Source: Salpingoeca rosetta | Taxonomy: Eukaryota > Protista > Choanoflagellata | NCBI GenBank assembly: GCA_033442325.1 | Contig: JAWQFM010000014.1 | Coordinates: 431,048-494,251, forward strand | DNA: 63,204 nt | Direction of reading: 5' to 3' | Shown: in pieces, positions 1,852 to 11,262 of the stretch | Position numbering within the stretch: position 1 is the stretch's first letter | Layout of the letters: each line of letters starts with the position of its first letter | The notes under the pieces: model-generated | The model's database searches: none | Seen by the model: the letters and a program-made list of their open reading frames with translations, nothing else | Told to the model about the DNA's origin: nothing | Made by a program: the position numbers and the translations under genes

Positions 1852-3804
1852 ATGGGCTTGACGGGCTACGGCAGCGTTGCCGGTATTCTGGGCAAGGACT
1901 GGGCGAGCAGGCGCTCCACGATAAGCACGCAAGATCGCGTGTGCGGCGTCGAGCTCCATGGCGTCATCCACAGGTTTCTGTGGAGGCGTGACAGGACATC
2001 ACTACGGCAGCATATGCAGAATCCAGCATGCAACCAGCTGAGCCAGGCGTGCTGTGCCCGAATCACCGGCCGAATCGTGCGACACGTCCAGACTCTCACC
2101 AAGATGTTCCGGCGCGTCATCATCGTCGACGAGACCCCGACGGCGTACAAGCTGCGGGACTCGGGAACCCCAAGCTGCTTGGTGAGACAGCTGCGCGCCG
2201 CCATCGAGCAGAAGACCAGCGCCGAGTTCACAACCGCACCGGGCGAGGCCGACCACCAGCTAGCAGCAATGCTCCGTCGCAAGGTGAGACGTGCACAAAC
2301 AAGCTTCAGCGAGGCTGCACTCGCACCAACGCAGCACCCACACACGCCGCACATGCACACACAGATGAAAAGCATGTTGACACACCCTCACGCCACTCAC
2401 ATTCATGCACACACACACACACGTACGTGCAGGAGATACACGTCGCGCTGTTCCCCTCGTCAGACAGTGACATGCTGCTGCACGACGCAGGGGATGGCAT
2501 CATCGTATTCCGCCACACACTGCAGCGCAAGGCGGGTCGCGTGGGGCTTCGTGGCGTCTGCATTCGCAAACGTCACAAGCTTTGCATGGCAGATGGCATC
2601 GTGGCGATCTTGGCGGGCTGCGATGTCTTCAAACGCGCCGGTTAGTGCATGTCCCAGCACCTGATTTGCAAACTGCGCCTCAATCCACACTCATAGTCAC
2701 ATCAGCAATGTTTATGGTGTGGTCACTGGGTATCAACAAAGAGCAAGTGTCGCATTCTCATCAACAAGCACAACTGCAGGTGTTGCACGGAAGCGGGCGC
2801 AAGCGTTGTTTGAGGCCGCAATGGCGGCGGAGGCGGCCGCTGCTGCCACGGCCGACACCACTACCACCACAGCCACAGCCACAGCTGACACAACCGCCGA
2901 CACCACCGCCGATACCACCGCTGCTGCCACTACCGACACCACCACCGACACCACAGCCACGGCGGCCACCACCGCCGACACCACAGCCCCAGCCCCGCCA
3001 CAGCCAACCGGCTGGGGTTCTGGCCCGCGGTAGCTGCTGTCGACCGGCACATCCGGGCAGACGGCGACTTCATCGCCGGTGCCGTCGCCTTCTTCTGCGG
3101 ACCGGTGCGCCTCGACGGCCGGGAGCAGATGCTGGCGCCGATGCCGGACAACTTCAGCACCCTACGGCCGCCCCTGAACCAGGACAACGACCCACATCAA
3201 CACTGCGTCCCAGGGCGAGCAAGGGTGATGAAGAAGATGAGCAGGCGGACAGGCAAGCGGGTCTTCAGGCGGATCAGCAAGCAGATCCACCCAAGCATGC
3301 AGCTTGCCCAAGAGTCCCCCCGTGTCCCCCAGCGCGTGCAAGAGCGCGAGGCAGGCAAGCAGGTTCAGACCCGAGCGCAGACGAAGGAGCAGGAGAAGCA
3401 GAGGGCGGAGACGCACGTGGCGGGCGGGAAGAAGAAGAAGGATGACAAGGAAAAGAAGAAGAAGAGGAACACGAAGAAGAAGGATACCGCAAGTGTGGAC
3501 GGCGGGGATGATGCCCGCTCGTTCTTCTGGCACGCGGATACAGCTGCAGTTATACCAGAGCCCGCGTCACCAGCAATCCCCGAAGCCAAGGCCGAGACAC
3601 CCGTGCAGCTGCAGCACCAGTGGGGGCTTGTCAGTGTCGTGCCCCATGGCCCCGACACGACGGCACCTTGTCTGTCAGACAAGATCATTGCCGCCCACAA
3701 GAAGCGTCAGGAGAAGAAGGCAAAGGAGAAGGCTGAGAAACGGGCGAAGCAGCAGGCCGCGAAGCAACAACAAGAACAACAAGAACAACAACAACAAGAA
3801 CAAG

Positions 3805-3901
<97 letters not shown>

Positions 3902-3935
3902 GCAGCAGCAGCACCAGCTGCAGCAGCAGCAGTAG
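1852..3935 (+). CDS. FEN1/XPG/Exo1-family (PIN-fold) 5' nuclease with H3TH motif and basic/poly-Q tail; possibly the N-terminal half of a fusion with the downstream Fanzor ORF
   Basis: Exons 1852-2283, 2433-2640 and 2780 onward (introns 2284-2432 and 2641-2779, both GT..AG and frame-consistent). XPG-N/I motifs in order: MGLTGY, VCGVELHGVIHRF, VIIVDETPTAYK, FTTAPGEADHQLAAM, VALFPSSDSDMLL, AILAGCDVFKRA|GVARKRAQALF (H3TH). An apparent frameshift between about 2889 and 3030 leads into ORF 3105-3935 (K-rich NLS-like segments, poly-Q). Confidence 0.8.
3764..3932 (+). repeat. (CAA/CAG)n poly-glutamine tract
   Basis: Long caacaa/cagcag run read in frame as poly-Q in ORF 3105-3935. Confidence 0.95.
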
Positions 3936-4235: not shown

Positions 4236-4335
4236 NNNNNNNNNNNNNNNNNNNNNNNNNNNNNNNNNNNNNNNNNNNNNNNNNNNNNNNNNNNNNNNNN
4301 NNNNNNNNNNNNNNNNNNNNNNNNNNNNNNNNNNN
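4236..4335. other. Assembly gap (100 N) with low-quality flanks
   Basis: N run. The sequence at about 3940-4235 loses coding character and looks like a read end. Confidence 0.98.
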
Positions 4336-6655
4336 GAAAGGCAAAGAGCAAGCCGTCGCAGGTGGCACTGTGTGTTCGCCAATCCGGGCCATGACAAGCG
4401 CAGCTGTCGCTAGACGTCACAGAGCAACCCACAGCCACAACAGCAGAAGCAGAAGCAGAAGCATAAGCAGACACAGAAGCAAAAGGCACCCCAGTCGGGG
4501 CAGACACAAAGCTCACCACCACTGCCACCAACTGCCACCACTACCACCACTGCCAGACCTCGCAAAGGCCAGGGCGTCGTTGCTACAGCTGCGCAAGTTG
4601 AATGATGAGTTACAGGCAGCGGTGCGTGAGCGAGACGAGGTACAGAAGGTGGTGGACGACCTCCTCGATCCAGTGGAGCATGACAGGGCCGTGCGCAGCC
4701 TGAAGGACAAGCAGGTGGTGGCTGACACGAAGCACCGCCACTTCCTGCACGCGCTGCAGGCCCTGAAAACAATGCTTCTGAATGAGCTACAGGAGTTTCA
4801 GGCCTGCAGAAGGGCTGCCAAGAGCCGGAAGGAGGCGCTCGCAGAGGAGCACGCGGCCAAGCAGGAGGCGCTCGCAGAGGAGCACGCGGCCAAGCAGGAG
4901 GCGCTCGCAGAGGAGCACGCGGCCAAGCAGGAGGCGCTCGCAGAGGAGCACGCGGCCAAGCAGGAGGCGCTCGCAGAGGAGCACGCGGCCAAGCAGGAGG
5001 CGCTCGCAGAGGAGCACGCGGCCAAGCAGGAGGCGCTCGCAGAGGAGCACGCAGCCAAGCAGGAGGCGCTCGCAGAGGAGCACGCGGCCAAGCAGGAGGC
5101 GCTCGCAGAGGAGCACGCAGCCAAGCAGGAGGCGCTAGAGAAGCACCAACAGCGGGAGGTGGCAGACCTCGAGCAGCGACAAGTACAGGAAATTCGCGAC
5201 TGTACCCTCACCGATGCTTACGCCAGGAAGATAGCGGACGTCCACAGGAGCACATGGTTAATGACGAAGAAGGGCATGGCGGTGTCCTCATGGACCGGGA
5301 GCATCCTGGAGTTTCACACGGCCCTGAAGACACAACAGCAGCGGCAGGAGGAGAACGACACATTCAAGTTCCACATGAGTAGGCAGGCAGCGCGCAACAC
5401 CATCCCCGTGGATGCCGTGAATCTCAAGCAAACGAGGGGCATGTTTGCGGTGATGTGCGTGGACAAGCTCCGTGTAGCAGAGCCGCTACCCGCTGCGAAA
5501 GACTTTCGCGGTCAGGCAAGGTTCACATTGGATGCGTCGGGGAGGTACCACATATGTGTGGCCTCCAACTTCACCCGAGGAGCACCTGATGACGTGGGAA
5601 CGCTCGGGCAAAGCTTGCTCCAGGTTGAGAGACCTGTGCTGGCAGGGTGCGACGACGGCCTGCAAGAGGTGGAGGAGGAGGAAGAGGCACGTGCAAAGTG
5701 CGAGGAACATGGCGGCGGGGACATGGCCATGCAGGCGTTGGAGGAGAAGGCACGTGTGAGGGAGCGGAAGATGGGCGAGGTGGCACGGCGGTTGCAAGCG
5801 GAGGCGAGGGAGGCGCGCAGGCGGTGGGTGAGGCTGAGACGGGCCAAGGCGATAGACAAGCAGACACAGGAAGCAGAGGCAGAGTTTCAGGCAGCACGAG
5901 AGCGACATGCGGCGCACCTGGACTGGCGGCGGCGGCTGCGAAAGCGGCGGCGACTTCTGCGCATGAAGGAGCGCAACGCTCTCCTGCGCGAGAGACGTGG
6001 CGGTGTTGTGTCCATTGACCCAGGCGTCCGCGTGCCATTCACGCTGTGGACGGCGTCTGGGACCGTGTCCATCGCGCATGACGCCATCGAGGAGCTGCGC
6101 ATGCTTCTCAGGAACGCCAATGACATCCGTGCTGATGCCGACCTCCTGGAAGTAGCGGTGCAGGAGGGCGAAGCCCGGGGCGAAGGCGACGTGGCAGCCG
6201 CGCGACGGCGGCACCGGCAGCAGCTGCGCGTGGTGAGGGACCGCGTGGACCACCTTCATCGAGTCGTCGCCAATTATCTTGTGATGTCGTTCCGCGTCGT
6301 GCTGCTGCCGCGCTTCGGCACCAGCCGGATGATCCGCCGGTCCGGTCGCCCGTTTGGCCGCGACACGGCTCGCTCCATGGGCGTCTGGGCACACTACCGC
6401 TTCAGGCAGCTGTTGTTGGACCGCGCGGAGAGGGAGCCTGGGTGCACGGTTGTGATCTGCGATGAGGCGTGGACGTCGAAGACCTGCGGCCGCTGCGGGC
6501 GGCTGCACCACAGCCTCGGCGCTGACGATGTGTTCGCATGCCCCCACGACAGCTGCAGATATGTCGCCGGCCGCGACGCCAACGCAGCCCGCAACATTCT
6601 GTTGCTGTGGCTGTACCGGAACGACATCCAGCTTGCACCGGTGCCAGCTCCTTAG
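4336..6655 (+). CDS. Fanzor2/IS607-TnpB-like RNA-guided endonuclease with long N-terminal coiled-coil extension (open to the gap; true start not visible)
   Basis: WED-like FKFHMSRQ...EPLP...ARFTLDASGRYHICV. RuvC-I VVSIDPGVRVPFT (D codon 6017-6019). HLHRVVANYL. RuvC-II VVLLPRFGTSRMI with the Fanzor-type Pro (6308-6310). WAHYRFRQLL. Relocated catalytic Glu in VICDEAWTSKTC (6464-6466). Zinc finger CGRC...CPHDSC. RuvC-III GRDANAARNILL (D codon 6575-6577). Stop TAG 6653-6655. Confidence 0.92.
4831..5136 (+). repeat. 33-bp coding tandem repeat, 9 full copies plus a partial (EALAEEHAAKQ)
   Basis: Unit ggaggcgctcgcagaggagcacgcggccaagca starts at 4831, 4864, ... 5095, with a partial copy at 5128. Copies are nearly identical (one gcg/gca synonymous variant). 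Confidence 0.97.
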
Positions 6656-6840
6656 CCGCGCACGGGGGAGGGAGGAGTAATCGCCGACACAGCACATGTT
6701 CACACGTCGAGCGATTGGGGCGGGGCAACCAAGAGAAGAGAAGCCGGGAGGCGAACGAGGACGAGGGGAAAGCGGCGTGCACCGGGCAAAGTCCTTCAGC
6801 ACGCACATGCTGCAGCTTGTGCCTGCATGCTGGCTGGACA
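6600..6840 (+). ncRNA. Candidate omegaRNA scaffold of the Fanzor
   Basis: Position at and after the ORF 3' end is where TnpB/Fanzor omegaRNAs are encoded. Visible stems: aatcgc-cgac...gtcg-a-gcgatt (6679-6716) and cagca-c-gcaca...tgtgc-ctgca-tgctg (6797-6832). Boundaries are inferred. Confidence 0.45.
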
Positions 6841-7653
6841 CAGGTGTGTGTGTGAGTGCTTGTGTGTGTGCCTGTGTGTGTGTGTGAATGTGTGCTTGTG
6901 TGTGTGTGTGTGTGCTTGTGTGCTTGTGTGTGCTTGTGTGTGTGTGTGTGTGTGCACGCGTTCATCATCGTCGAGATCTTGCCGAATTTTGTTGAAGGTT
7001 TTCACAAATCTTCCAAACTTGCGATTTTTCGAGGTTGCTGTTGCCAACGATTGTCGACAGCAGAGAACAGACGACCGCGCTCCTTTCTTTCTCTCCTCAC
7101 CTCCTCGAGCTCTCACCCCACTCCCACTCACATACCCCCCCCTCCCCTAACACTCACACAACACACACGACACACCAGCTCGCACGTGTGGCTCGCATGT
7201 GAAGCACCCCTACTATCCCCTTCTTCCTTGTTTTTTTCTCTTTGATCCCACCCCCTCCCTTCCCCCGTTTTACAGGTTGTTGGGTACCTGCTGATCTACT
7301 ACGGTCAGCTTCGTAAAAACCCAAAGGTGAGCGGCTTGACGGCGTGATGTGTGAGTTTGTATGTGTATGTGTGCGTGAATGTGTGTGTGTGTGTGTTTGA
7401 GTGTGTGTGAGTCTGTGTGTGTGTGAGTGTGTGTGAATGTGTGTGTGTGAGTGTATGTGTGAGTGTGTGTGTCAGTGCGTGTGAATGTATGTGCGAGTGT
7501 GTCTGTGTGTGTGTCAGTGCGTATGATGAGTGCGAGTGGATGACACAAGATATGAACCTGAAATGTCAAGCGAAAATATCCCCGCAAGCACTTACACTTC
7601 TTTTGCATTCAACTTCCGTCAACAAAGCGCACCGTCGTGGTTGGCGTACGACA

Positions 7654-11262
<3,609 letters not shown>

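What the first reader, a model, noticed from the sequence alone, without database searches (positions are those of the whole stretch)
5240..6655. Fanzor2-signature RuvC with intact rearranged D-E-D triad and C4 zinc finger
Seen: SIDPG (D at 6017), LLPRF (Pro where canonical TnpB has Glu), DEAWTSKTC (alternative Glu at 6464), CxxC...CxxxxC and RDANAARNI (D at 6575), with no stops in about 2.3 kb. Established: the Glu relocated next to the zinc finger marks Fanzors and their IS607-related TnpB ancestors; Pro at the old site with a W/L-x-HY-x-F motif resembles Fanzor2. Inference: probably an active nuclease in an apparent choanoflagellate host.
Basis: partly seen in the sequence, partly recalled or inferred. 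Interest (0 to 1): 0.8.

Follow-up and report, generated by a model that had tools for sequence, protein, structure and literature searches.

The report
Known choanoflagellate Fanzor2 nuclease gene (SAl-1)
This is a real Fanzor2 (eukaryotic TnpB-like, presumably RNA-guided) nuclease gene in the choanoflagellate Salpingoeca rosetta with every catalytic residue intact. The same locus was published in 2013 as element SAl-1, so only its possible link to a neighbouring FEN1/XPG-like nuclease is new.

Summary
**Observation:** confirmed to the base. The ORF at 4370-6655 (761 aa) carries D550 (6017), Pro647 at the old Glu site, E699 (6464), a C4 zinc ribbon and D736 (6575).

**Identity:** Pfam TNB scores 1e-13. 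The best solved structure by sequence and by fold is mimivirus Fanzor2 (9b0l). D550 and E699 align with its essential D324 and E467.

**Host:** Salpingoeca rosetta (GL832966.1, PTSG_12268), between ordinary eukaryotic genes, so this is not contamination.

**Novelty:** already known. The protein and DNA are element SAl-1 of Bao and Jurka 2013, and the relocated Glu was described in 2023.

**Activity:** unproven.
- A 98%-identical second copy shows a longer ancestral N-terminus with a CCHC knuckle.
- In that ancestral frame this copy has a stop and a +1 shift, next to an assembly gap.
- The second copy has a frameshifting deletion.
- I found no omegaRNA signal and no transposase.

**New lead:**
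- A FEN1/XPG-like gene lies directly upstream on the same strand.
- SAl-1 falls in a four-member clade (support 98/97) with a 1307-aa single-ORF XPG-Fanzor2 fusion from another organism.
- First readers noted Fanzor and XPG-Fanzor loci on other pieces of this genome. Those notes are unchecked.

The parts
4370..6655 (+). Fanzor2 ORF (761 aa as read; annotated as PTSG_12268, 707 aa, from the ATG at 4391 with a predicted GT-AG intron at 4416-4556). The frame is open up to the gap, so the true 5' end is unknown.
4236..4335 (.). 100-N assembly gap. It hides at least 546 bp of upstream coding sequence that is present in the paralog L001.
4357..4413 (+). Remnant of a CCHC zinc knuckle (CTVCRQSGHDKRSC in the paralog), read in the ancestral frame. 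Here it is scrambled by four 1-nt insertions within 50 bp of the gap and closed by a TAG at 4411-4413 (C>T relative to the paralog). An extra A near 4530 then shifts the ancestral frame onto the ORF frame.
4830..5136 (+). 33-bp tandem repeat x9.3 (EALAEEHAAKQ units) inside the helical N-terminal (REC-like) region. There are 9 units here and 6 in the paralog.
5222..5575 (+). WED/REC-like part matching the family profile (residues 285-402; FKFHMSRQ...AEPLP...GRYHICV). Model pLDDT is about 75-93.
5726..5992 (+). E/R/A-rich insertion predicted as one roughly 89-residue helix (residues 453-541) between the WED domain and RuvC-I. Relatives have only about 15-25 residues here.
6017..6019 (+). RuvC-I Asp550, aligned with D324 of ApmFz2.
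   Evidence: PMC10530073
6308..6310 (+). Pro647 at the canonical RuvC-II Glu position (Pro in about 96% of 300 relatives).
6464..6466 (+). Relocated RuvC-II Glu699, aligned with E467 of ApmFz2.
   Evidence: PMC10530073
6485..6556 (+). C4 zinc ribbon of the TNB domain (C706, C709, C724, C729).
6575..6577 (+). RuvC-III Asp736.
6656..7619 (+). 3' non-coding part of the repeated unit. Similarity to the paralog stops sharply at 7619 (...TTCAACTTCCGT), the right terminus of published SAl-1. It contains GT-rich microsatellites. Places 6842-6965 were not sent to any search tool.
1852..3935 (+). Upstream same-strand gene (annotated, 583 aa, no Pfam hit on record) with FEN1/XPG-like motifs. My exon model is 1852-2283, 2433-2640 and 2780 onward. 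It may be functionally or physically linked to the Fanzor, but this is not shown.

Best explanation
The stretch is the C-terminal catalytic half of one genomic copy of SAl-1. SAl-1 is a low-copy Fanzor2 element of Salpingoeca rosetta, annotated as PTSG_12268. Fanzor2 is the eukaryotic branch of IS607-type TnpB.

Shown here:
- The protein has a TnpB-type WED/REC-like region, a split RuvC domain and a zinc-ribbon TNB domain.
- Its active site is the rearranged type: Asp550, Pro at the old Glu site, Glu699 next to the zinc finger, and Asp736.
- These align with residues shown by others to be essential in mimivirus Fanzor2.
- It sits among ordinary host genes.
- It shares a sharp right end (7619) with a second, 98%-identical copy.

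Inferred from homology only: if expressed and folded, it would bind an omegaRNA transcribed from the 3' end of the element up to the right end. It would then cut double-stranded DNA matching the roughly 20 nt that flank the right end, next to a TAM, using the single RuvC site.

My estimate that this particular copy makes an active nuclease is about 0.4. The catalytic core is perfect. However, the N-terminus is uncertain or damaged, the only other copy I could read is broken, and no guide RNA or transposase was found.
For: - **Motifs and domains:**
- **Sequence match to solved structures:** best hit 9b0l (mimivirus L79 = ApmFz2), E 1.1e-12. SIDPG aligns on GIDPG (D324) and DEAWTSKTC on NEYLTTKTC (E467). 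D324A and E467A abolish cleavage (PMC10530073).
- **Fold:** the AF2 model has mean pLDDT 74, with RuvC/TNB mostly 88-95. Foldseek's best hit is 9b0l, E 4.2e-11 over 481 columns. Cas12f and TnpB score about 1e-6, and Fanzor1 (SpuFz) only 1.7e-3.
- **Conservation:** all 6 invariant columns and the 32 nearly invariant columns listed for the 83-sequence alignment are labelled with this protein's own residues. D/P/E/D is conserved in 300 relatives.
- **Published identity:** the protein MCVDKL...LAPVPAP and the DNA 5386-7619 are printed as SAl-1 in the supplements of PMC3627910.
- **Host:** NCBI record GL832966.1 and the name PTSG_12268 [Salpingoeca rosetta]. The neighbours are an EGF/TNFR receptor, a RING protein and Nup160. 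The stretch is held by runs of 11 studies of one organism.
- **Tree:** SAl-1 lies apart from the cyanobacterial TnpB clade.
- **Paralog:** sharp right end.
Against:
- No omegaRNA signal. Fold z-scores run from -0.96 to +1.23 and there is no Rfam hit.
- No serine recombinase or other transposase among the neighbours.
- The branch is long (1.3 changes per column against a median of 0.5) and the composition is odd.
- The family's N-terminal HTH motif (RWTYN) is not recognisable.
- Two large helical insertions, one a recent tandem repeat.
- Relative to the paralog's long upstream reading frame, this copy has a TAG at 4411-4413 and a +1 insertion near 4530. The paralog has a frameshifting deletion of about 190 nt.
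- Some of these differences may be assembly errors near gaps.
Confidence: 0.85

Rival explanations
1. The Fanzor ORF is the 3' part of a larger gene or two-gene module. A FEN1/XPG-family 5' nuclease (window 1852-3935) would be joined or functionally coupled to the Fanzor2, as in the single-ORF fusion P0094. The flap/exo nuclease would resect or process the ends made by the guided RuvC cut.
For: - P0094 (1307 aa, one uninterrupted ORF on contig L002, GC 68%) has Pfam XPG_I (2.6e-8) plus OrfB and TNB. Its N-terminus matches FEN-1 (1.9e-8) and EXO1 (1.2e-7) in the PDB.
- SAl-1 and P0094 fall in one four-member clade, support 98/97.
- The gene directly upstream, on the same strand, has these motifs in order once two GT-AG introns are removed: MGLTG..., VELHG, IVDE, APGEADHQLAAML, SSDSDMLLH, LAGCDV, GGVARKRAQAL.
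- P0094's XPG-I region aligns to it in register.
- Language-model neighbours of exon 1 are all PIN/FEN-like: XRN_N, Asteroid/XPG_N, FEN1.
- The XPG-I motif occurs in none of the other 162 fetched loci (1.1 Mb).
- The paralog's Fanzor frame runs at least 182 codons further upstream.
Against: - There is no Pfam or PDB hit for the upstream gene's pieces and none on record for the annotated 583-aa product.
- BLASTP against P0094 finds nothing. The phmmer score is only 4.5 bits, the atlas scores are below 0.9, and the exon-1 model is poor (pLDDT 54).
- The annotation ends that gene at a TAG (3933-3935). About 300 bp with no coding signal, plus the gap, follow it.
- The other two clade members show no XPG domain.
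- Both SAl-1 and P0094 are long branches.
Confidence: 0.35
2. This copy is an inactive relic: a decaying, immobile Fanzor2 pseudogene whose C-terminal half still looks perfect only because the duplication is recent.
For: - Only 3 copies are reported and no transposase is present.
- The two readable copies are about 98% identical, so intact motifs say little about selection.
- This copy has a stop and a frameshift in the ancestral N-terminal frame, and the paralog has a frameshifting deletion.
- A tandem repeat is expanding inside the coding region.
- The branch is long.
Against: - A 754-aa ORF from the ATG at 4391 still covers the whole TnpB-like core.
- Every invariant and nearly invariant family residue is kept despite a long branch, which argues for past purifying selection.
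- There are fewer substitutions between copies in coding DNA (about 3 in 1220 nt) than in 3' non-coding DNA (5 in 466 nt). The numbers are small.
- The lesions lie within 200 bp of an assembly gap and may be errors.
Confidence: 0.4
3. It is a bacterial TnpB from a contaminant or from the food bacteria of the choanoflagellate culture.
For: Cyanobacterial TnpBs reach 33-40% identity over the RuvC part and share the same rearranged site.
Against: - The locus lies inside a 1.67-Mb S. rosetta scaffold between spliced eukaryotic genes. A second copy lies in a 2.08-Mb scaffold.
- Runs of 11 studies of the organism hold it.
- It is surrounded by microsatellites and polyQ coding sequence.
- The tree separates it from the cyanobacterial clade (97/86).
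Confidence: 0.01

Closest known systems
SAl-1, a Fanzor2 element of Salpingoeca sp. ATCC 50818 (Bao and Jurka 2013, Mob DNA 4:12, PMC3627910)
   Same: It is the same sequence. The published 400-aa protein equals residues 362-761 of the ORF, and the published DNA equals window 5386-7619. It is classed there as Fanzor2, with 3 copies and only the right terminus defined.
   Different: The paper annotated only the last 400 aa in one exon. Here the frame continues at least 361 codons further up in this copy, and at least 182 more in the paralog, including a CCHC knuckle. The paper mentions neither the upstream FEN/XPG-like gene nor the lesions.
ApmFz2 / ApmFNuc (mimivirus L79, PDB 9b0l), the biochemically and structurally characterised Fanzor2
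   Same: It is the best match by sequence (E 1.1e-12) and by fold (E 4.2e-11). It has the same rearranged site: D324/E467 correspond to D550/E699. It also has the same zinc ribbon and RD..A.NI motif.
   Different: Overall identity is only about 15-25%. SAl-1 has an insertion of about 150 aa before RuvC-I, a repeat-expanded helical N-terminal part and no recognisable HTH motif. It has no adjacent IS607 TnpA and no identified omegaRNA.
IS607-type TnpB of cyanobacteria with the rearranged RuvC site (the 'TnpB2' clade of Jiang et al. 2023; Yoon et al. 2023)
   Same: It has the same D/P/E/D arrangement, W/L-x-HY-x-F motif and C4 ribbon, with 33-40% identity over about 200 aa.
   Different: These are prokaryotic, compact, multi-copy IS elements. 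SAl-1 lies in a separate clade, sits in a eukaryotic chromosome and carries long disordered or helical additions.
P0094, an unnamed 1307-aa XPG/FEN1-Fanzor2 fusion on Logan contig SRR20381884_155488 (L002)
   Same: It is one of SAl-1's three clade partners in the RuvC tree (clade support 98/97, internal order unresolved). It is 41-44% identical over RuvC/TNB, and SAl-1 is P0094's own closest match. They share the RPFG/RVFG-type variant of the motif after LLPxF.
   Different: In P0094 the FEN-like domain and the Fanzor are one uninterrupted ORF with significant Pfam and PDB matches. In the window the FEN-like gene is spliced and far more divergent. It is separated from the Fanzor ORF by a stop, about 300 bp and an assembly gap.

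Membership tests
Fanzor2 | TnpB-type split RuvC domain with a C-terminal zinc-ribbon (TNB) domain | tested here: met
   Pfam PF07282 E 9.6e-14. NCBIfam guided_TnpB E 1.4e-18, but at 67.4 bits it is below that model's curated cutoff of 100. Family profile 254 bits.
Fanzor2 | Rearranged RuvC-II: an inert residue (Pro/Gly) at the canonical Glu, and an alternative Glu about 45-50 residues downstream next to the zinc finger | tested here: met
   P647 and E699 (52 residues apart). E699 aligns with the essential E467 of ApmFz2 (PMC10530073).
Fanzor2 | Encoded in a eukaryotic (or eukaryote-virus) genome, not in a prokaryote | tested here: met
   S. rosetta scaffold GL832966.1 between spliced host genes, with a second copy on GL832960.1. 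Runs of 11 studies hold it.
Fanzor2 | Closer to Fanzor2 and IS607-type TnpB than to Fanzor1 | tested here: met
   Best PDB hit by sequence and fold is ApmFz2. Fanzor1 structures (SpuFz, PpFz) score only E 1.7e-3 to 1e-2. It is placed in Fanzor2 by Bao and Jurka. I had no labelled Fanzor1 sequences to include in my own tree.
Fanzor2 | An omegaRNA encoded at the 3' end of the element, running into the right end | tested here: inconclusive
   The right end is defined at 7619. No segment folds better than shuffles, there is no Rfam match, and no reads could be laid.
Fanzor2 | RNA-guided, TAM-dependent double-strand DNA cleavage | not testable with these tools
   This needs biochemistry.
IS607-type mobile element | An adjacent TnpA serine recombinase | tested here: not met
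   No such gene is among the called neighbours within about 10 kb either side. Bao and Jurka list none for SAl-1. Many Fanzor2 loci lack it, so this does not exclude Fanzor2.
XPG/FEN1-Fanzor2 fusion (type: P0094) | A recognisable XPG/FEN1 (PIN-like) nuclease domain N-terminal to the Fanzor | tested here: inconclusive
   Ordered motif matches after splicing, a weak in-register phmmer alignment and PIN/FEN-like language-model neighbours. But there is no Pfam or PDB hit and the model is poor.
XPG/FEN1-Fanzor2 fusion (type: P0094) | Both domains in one reading frame or one transcript | not testable with these tools

The most novel reading that the evidence does not exclude
SAl-1 belongs to a small, undescribed Fanzor2 lineage that is physically coupled to a FEN1/EXO1-like 5' nuclease. 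The coupling is a single ORF in P0094, and an adjacent or spliced upstream gene in S. rosetta. In such a system the guided RuvC cut would be followed by built-in 5' resection or flap processing. In a eukaryotic nucleus that could push repair towards homologous recombination, which is the route by which TnpB-type nucleases preserve their element. I found no paper holding 'Fanzor' together with 'XPG', and none of 12 papers combining Fanzor or TnpB terms with flap-endonuclease or EXO1 terms describes a natural fusion.
Probability: 0.35. Interest if true: 0.7.

Novelty: already known. Interest (0 to 1): 0.3.

Why it matters
As given, the finding rediscovers a published element, so it adds little.

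Three things found here may matter:
- The published and annotated gene models are truncated. The true protein is longer and had a CCHC zinc knuckle.
- The copies are few and damaged. S. rosetta is therefore a doubtful source of an active enzyme until it is re-sequenced.
- A natural single-ORF fusion of a FEN1/EXO1-like nuclease with a Fanzor2 exists (P0094), in the same small clade as the S. rosetta element, which has a FEN-like gene next to it.

Engineered exonuclease-Cas fusions are used to change editing outcomes (from my own knowledge). A natural counterpart would bear on how eukaryotic TnpB descendants deal with eukaryotic DNA repair.

Tried and rejected
I therefore have no expression, splicing or omegaRNA evidence. 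One local script used the whole window file as a BLAST subject inside the sandbox and printed only coordinates.
- **Exact look-up** of ten Met-start variants of the ORF: none is in the collection.
- **Word-based homolog searches** with the N- and C-terminal parts of P0094 returned only P0094 itself.
- **Scans with P0094:** the metagenome scan found nothing. Viral scans with L002's neighbouring gene and with P0094's XPG part gave no usable locus.
- **Upstream gene:** Pfam and PDB searches on its pieces gave no XPG hit. BLASTP against P0094 found nothing. Single-sequence AF2 of exon 1 was uninformative (pLDDT 54).
- **Annotated 583-aa model:** trying to recover its exon structure by enumeration gave 107 solutions and was abandoned.
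- **Other S. rosetta Fanzor or XPG-Fanzor loci** noted by first readers could not be fetched with the collections on hand.
- **Contamination** was considered and rejected.
Full report
**The observation.**
The + strand ORF 4370..6655 has no stop for 2286 nt and encodes 761 aa.

| Motif | Coordinates | Key residue |
|---|---|---|
| SIDPG | 6011-6025 | Asp550 at 6017 |
| LLPRF | 6302-6316 | Pro647 at 6308 |
| WAHYRF | 6386-6403 | |
| DEAWTSKTC | 6461-6487 | Glu699 at 6464 |
| CGRCG...CPHDSC | 6485-6556 | C706, C709, C724, C729 |
| RDANAARNI | 6572-6598 | Asp736 at 6575 |

- Pfam gives Cas12f1-like TNB at E 9.6e-14.
- NCBIfam gives 'RNA-guided endonuclease TnpB family' at E 1.4e-18. At 67.4 bits that is below the model's curated cutoff of 100, because only its C-terminal half matched.
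One correction: the frame is open right up to a 100-N assembly gap at 4236-4335, so the ORF's 5' end is unknown.

**What it is.**
- By sequence, the best solved structure is 9b0l, mimivirus L79 (ApmFz2, the characterised Fanzor2), at E 1.1e-12. SIDPG lies on GIDPG (D324) and DEAWTSKTC lies on NEYLTTKTC (E467).
- Jiang et al. showed that D324A and E467A kill ApmFNuc. They also showed that Fanzors carry Pro or Gly at the old RuvC-II Glu and an alternative Glu about 45 residues on (PMC10530073).
- An AlphaFold2 model built on 83 sequences has mean pLDDT 74, with the RuvC/TNB part mostly 88-95.
- Foldseek ranks 9b0l first (E 4.2e-11, 481 columns). Cas12f and TnpB follow at about 1e-6, and Fanzor1 structures score only 1.7e-3 and worse.
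- In the 83-sequence alignment, the 6 invariant columns and the 32 nearly invariant columns are all labelled with this protein's own residues.
- Across 300 relatives the states are: D550 100%, P647 about 96%, E699 100%, D736 about 100%.
- The same table shows that 77 cyanobacterial TnpBs share the whole signature, including W/L-x-HY-x-F. The motifs mark the IS607-TnpB/Fanzor2 branch as a whole, not Fanzor2 alone.

**Host and contamination.**
- The 90% cluster of a truncated self-hit (P0031) holds P0176. This is EGD73462.1 / XP_004993744.1, 'hypothetical protein PTSG_12268 [Salpingoeca rosetta]', UniRef F2UAP6.
- Its locus is GL832966.1:409439-431703 of GCA_000188695.1, a 1.67-Mb scaffold. It matches the window with an offset of 5610.
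- The neighbours are a TNFR/EGF receptor, a RING protein and Nup160.
- Runs from 11 studies of one organism hold the stretch.
- In a careful ML tree of 56 sequences, the cyanobacterial TnpBs form their own clade (97/86) and SAl-1 lies elsewhere.

**It is already published.**
- Bao and Jurka 2013 list two Fanzor2 families in 'Salpingoeca sp. ATCC 50818'.
- Their supplements print SAl-1. Its protein, MCVDKL...LAPVPAP, equals ORF residues 362-761. Its DNA equals window 5386-7619.
- Their table gives 3 copies, only the right terminus defined, 400 aa in 1 exon and no transposase.
- Saito et al. 2023 also name choanoflagellates among Fanzor2 hosts.
- I found no paper pairing 'Fanzor' with 'Salpingoeca rosetta' and none naming PTSG_12268.

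**What the published model misses.**
- A family profile matches residues 533-754 (254 bits), and more weakly a stretch ending at residue 402 whose confident part, residues 285-402, is the WED/REC part. The HTH motif RWTYN is not recognisable.
- Two additions are peculiar to SAl-1.
  - The first is a 33-bp tandem repeat x9.3 (98% matches between units) that encodes EALAEEHAAKQ units inside a long helix.
  - The second is an insertion of about 150 aa before RuvC-I, of which about 89 residues are modelled as a single helix. Relatives have 15-25 residues there.
- A second copy, L001 on GL832960.1, is about 98% identical.
  - Similarity starts at the window's gap edge (4338) and stops sharply at 7619...TTCAACTTCCGT | CAACAAAGC here against | AAGACGAGG there. 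Unrelated genes follow in each copy.
  - In L001 the Fanzor frame stays open for all 546 bp available upstream (182 codons; chance about 0.003 at this GC content, my estimate). It encodes a CCHC knuckle, CTVCRQSGHDKRSC, and Lys-rich, NLS-like runs.
- Against L001, the window copy differs as follows:
  - four 1-nt insertions within 50 bp of the gap, which are probably read-end errors;
  - a C>T that makes a TAG at 4411-4413 in the knuckle frame;
  - an extra A near 4530 that moves the ancestral frame onto the frame of the ATG at 4391.
- L001 itself lacks about 190 nt (window about 5130-5322). That shifts its frame, which is why it was annotated as two genes of 263 and 290 aa.
- Neither readable copy is therefore cleanly intact, although some lesions may be assembly artefacts.
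- Substitutions between the copies are too few to test selection: about 3 in 1220 coding nt against 5 in 466 non-coding nt.

**Guide RNA.**
- By analogy with TnpB and Fanzor2, the omegaRNA should end at the right end (7619), and the guide should be the flank beyond it.
- No segment of 6600-6841 or 6966-7640 folds better than shuffled sequence (z from -0.96 to +1.23).
- Rfam finds nothing.
- The right end lies 965 nt past the stop codon, with GT microsatellites in between.
I kept those places out of every later search.

**The upstream gene and the fusion lead.**
- The annotation has a 583-aa gene at window 1852-3935, on the same strand, with no Pfam hit on record.
- Removing two GT-AG introns (2284-2432 and 2641-2779) gives a protein with FEN1/XPG-like motifs in the right order. 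These are MGLTG, VELHG, IVDE, APGEADHQLAAMLRRK-EIHVALFPSSDSDMLLH, LAGCDV and GGVARKRAQAL. The match to FEN1's acidic residues is judged from my own knowledge.
- GC3 supports coding sequence through about 3935. After that come about 300 bp without coding signal, and then the gap.
- Formal support is weak.
  - There are no Pfam or PDB hits on the pieces.
  - There is a 4.5-bit in-register phmmer alignment to P0094.
  - The language-model neighbours are all PIN/FEN-like but score below 0.9.
  - The exon-1 structure model is useless.
- Independently, the exhaustive protein search found P0094.
  - It is a 1307-aa uninterrupted ORF on a 10.7-kb contig of 68% GC.
  - It has Pfam XPG_I (2.6e-8) plus OrfB_IS605 and TNB.
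  - It matches FEN-1 (1.9e-8) and EXO1 (1.2e-7) in the PDB.
- SAl-1, P0094 and two metagenomic proteins form a clade with support 97 (quick tree) and 98/97 (careful tree). Both SAl-1 and P0094 are long branches, so caution is due.
- The XPG-I motif is absent from the other 162 loci fetched.
- An XPG-like same-strand neighbour arising by chance would be rare: a few such genes among roughly 11,600, by my estimate.
- I therefore rate a real link at about 0.35. Whether the two are one gene here cannot be decided across the gap.
- First readers flagged XPG-Fanzor arrangements on other pieces of this genome. I could not fetch those loci, so they remain leads.

**Mechanism and verdict.**
- **Shown:** a Fanzor2-type protein with an intact rearranged RuvC site and zinc ribbon, in a choanoflagellate chromosome, as one of a few near-identical copies with a defined right end.
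- **Inferred:** omegaRNA-guided, TAM-dependent double-strand cleavage, as in ApmFz2.
- **Activity of this copy:** about 0.4.
- **Novelty:** already known (SAl-1, 2013; the rearranged Glu, 2023).
- **Remaining interest:** the longer, CCHC-bearing gene model and the possible FEN/EXO1-coupled Fanzor2 lineage.

Noticed in passing
window 1852-3935 (+): Annotated 583-aa gene with FEN1/XPG-like motifs after splicing (introns 2284-2432 and 2641-2779), followed by T/A-rich, K/E-rich and polyQ low-complexity coding sequence. There is no Pfam hit on record. It lies directly upstream of the Fanzor on the same strand.
   Followed up: partly
L002:1555-5478 (Logan contig SRR20381884_155488; protein P0094): A single 1307-aa ORF joins a FEN1/EXO1-like nuclease (Pfam XPG_I 2.6e-8; PDB FEN-1 1.9e-8) to a Fanzor2 with an intact D/E/D site, in DNA of 68% GC from an unknown organism. 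The word-based protein searches, the metagenome scan and one viral scan found no close relative; the exhaustive search was not re-run with P0094.
   Followed up: partly
L001:8589-9200 (paralog on GL832960.1); window 4357-4413: The paralog's Fanzor frame continues at least 182 codons upstream and encodes a CCHC zinc knuckle. The published SAl-2 protein also carries a CCHC knuckle (CKCGRLGHSQRQC). In the window the knuckle is scrambled by near-gap single-base insertions and followed by a TAG.
   Followed up: yes
window 7619/7654 and L001 12274/12309: In both copies the right end of the repeated unit lies exactly 35 bp before the annotated start codon of an unrelated downstream gene on the same strand (a RING-finger gene here, an RLI-like gene in the paralog). 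With only two cases this could be insertion preference, promoter donation or chance.
   Followed up: no
window 4830-5136 vs L001 about 9620-9950: The 33-bp coding tandem repeat has 9 units in this copy and 6 in the paralog. The paralog's deletion of about 190 nt starts inside the repeat, between CACGCGGCC and CACACGGCC.
   Followed up: yes
window 4336-4390: Four single-base insertions relative to the paralog lie within about 50 bp of the N gap. They look like low-quality contig-end sequence, so gene models that touch this edge should not be trusted.
   Followed up: partly
loci L083-L162 (genome contigs): The nearest prokaryotic relatives are almost all TnpBs of filamentous cyanobacteria (Microcoleus, Okeania, Moorena, Calothrix and others), many in several copies per genome. 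All of them have the rearranged D/P/E/D site.
   Followed up: partly
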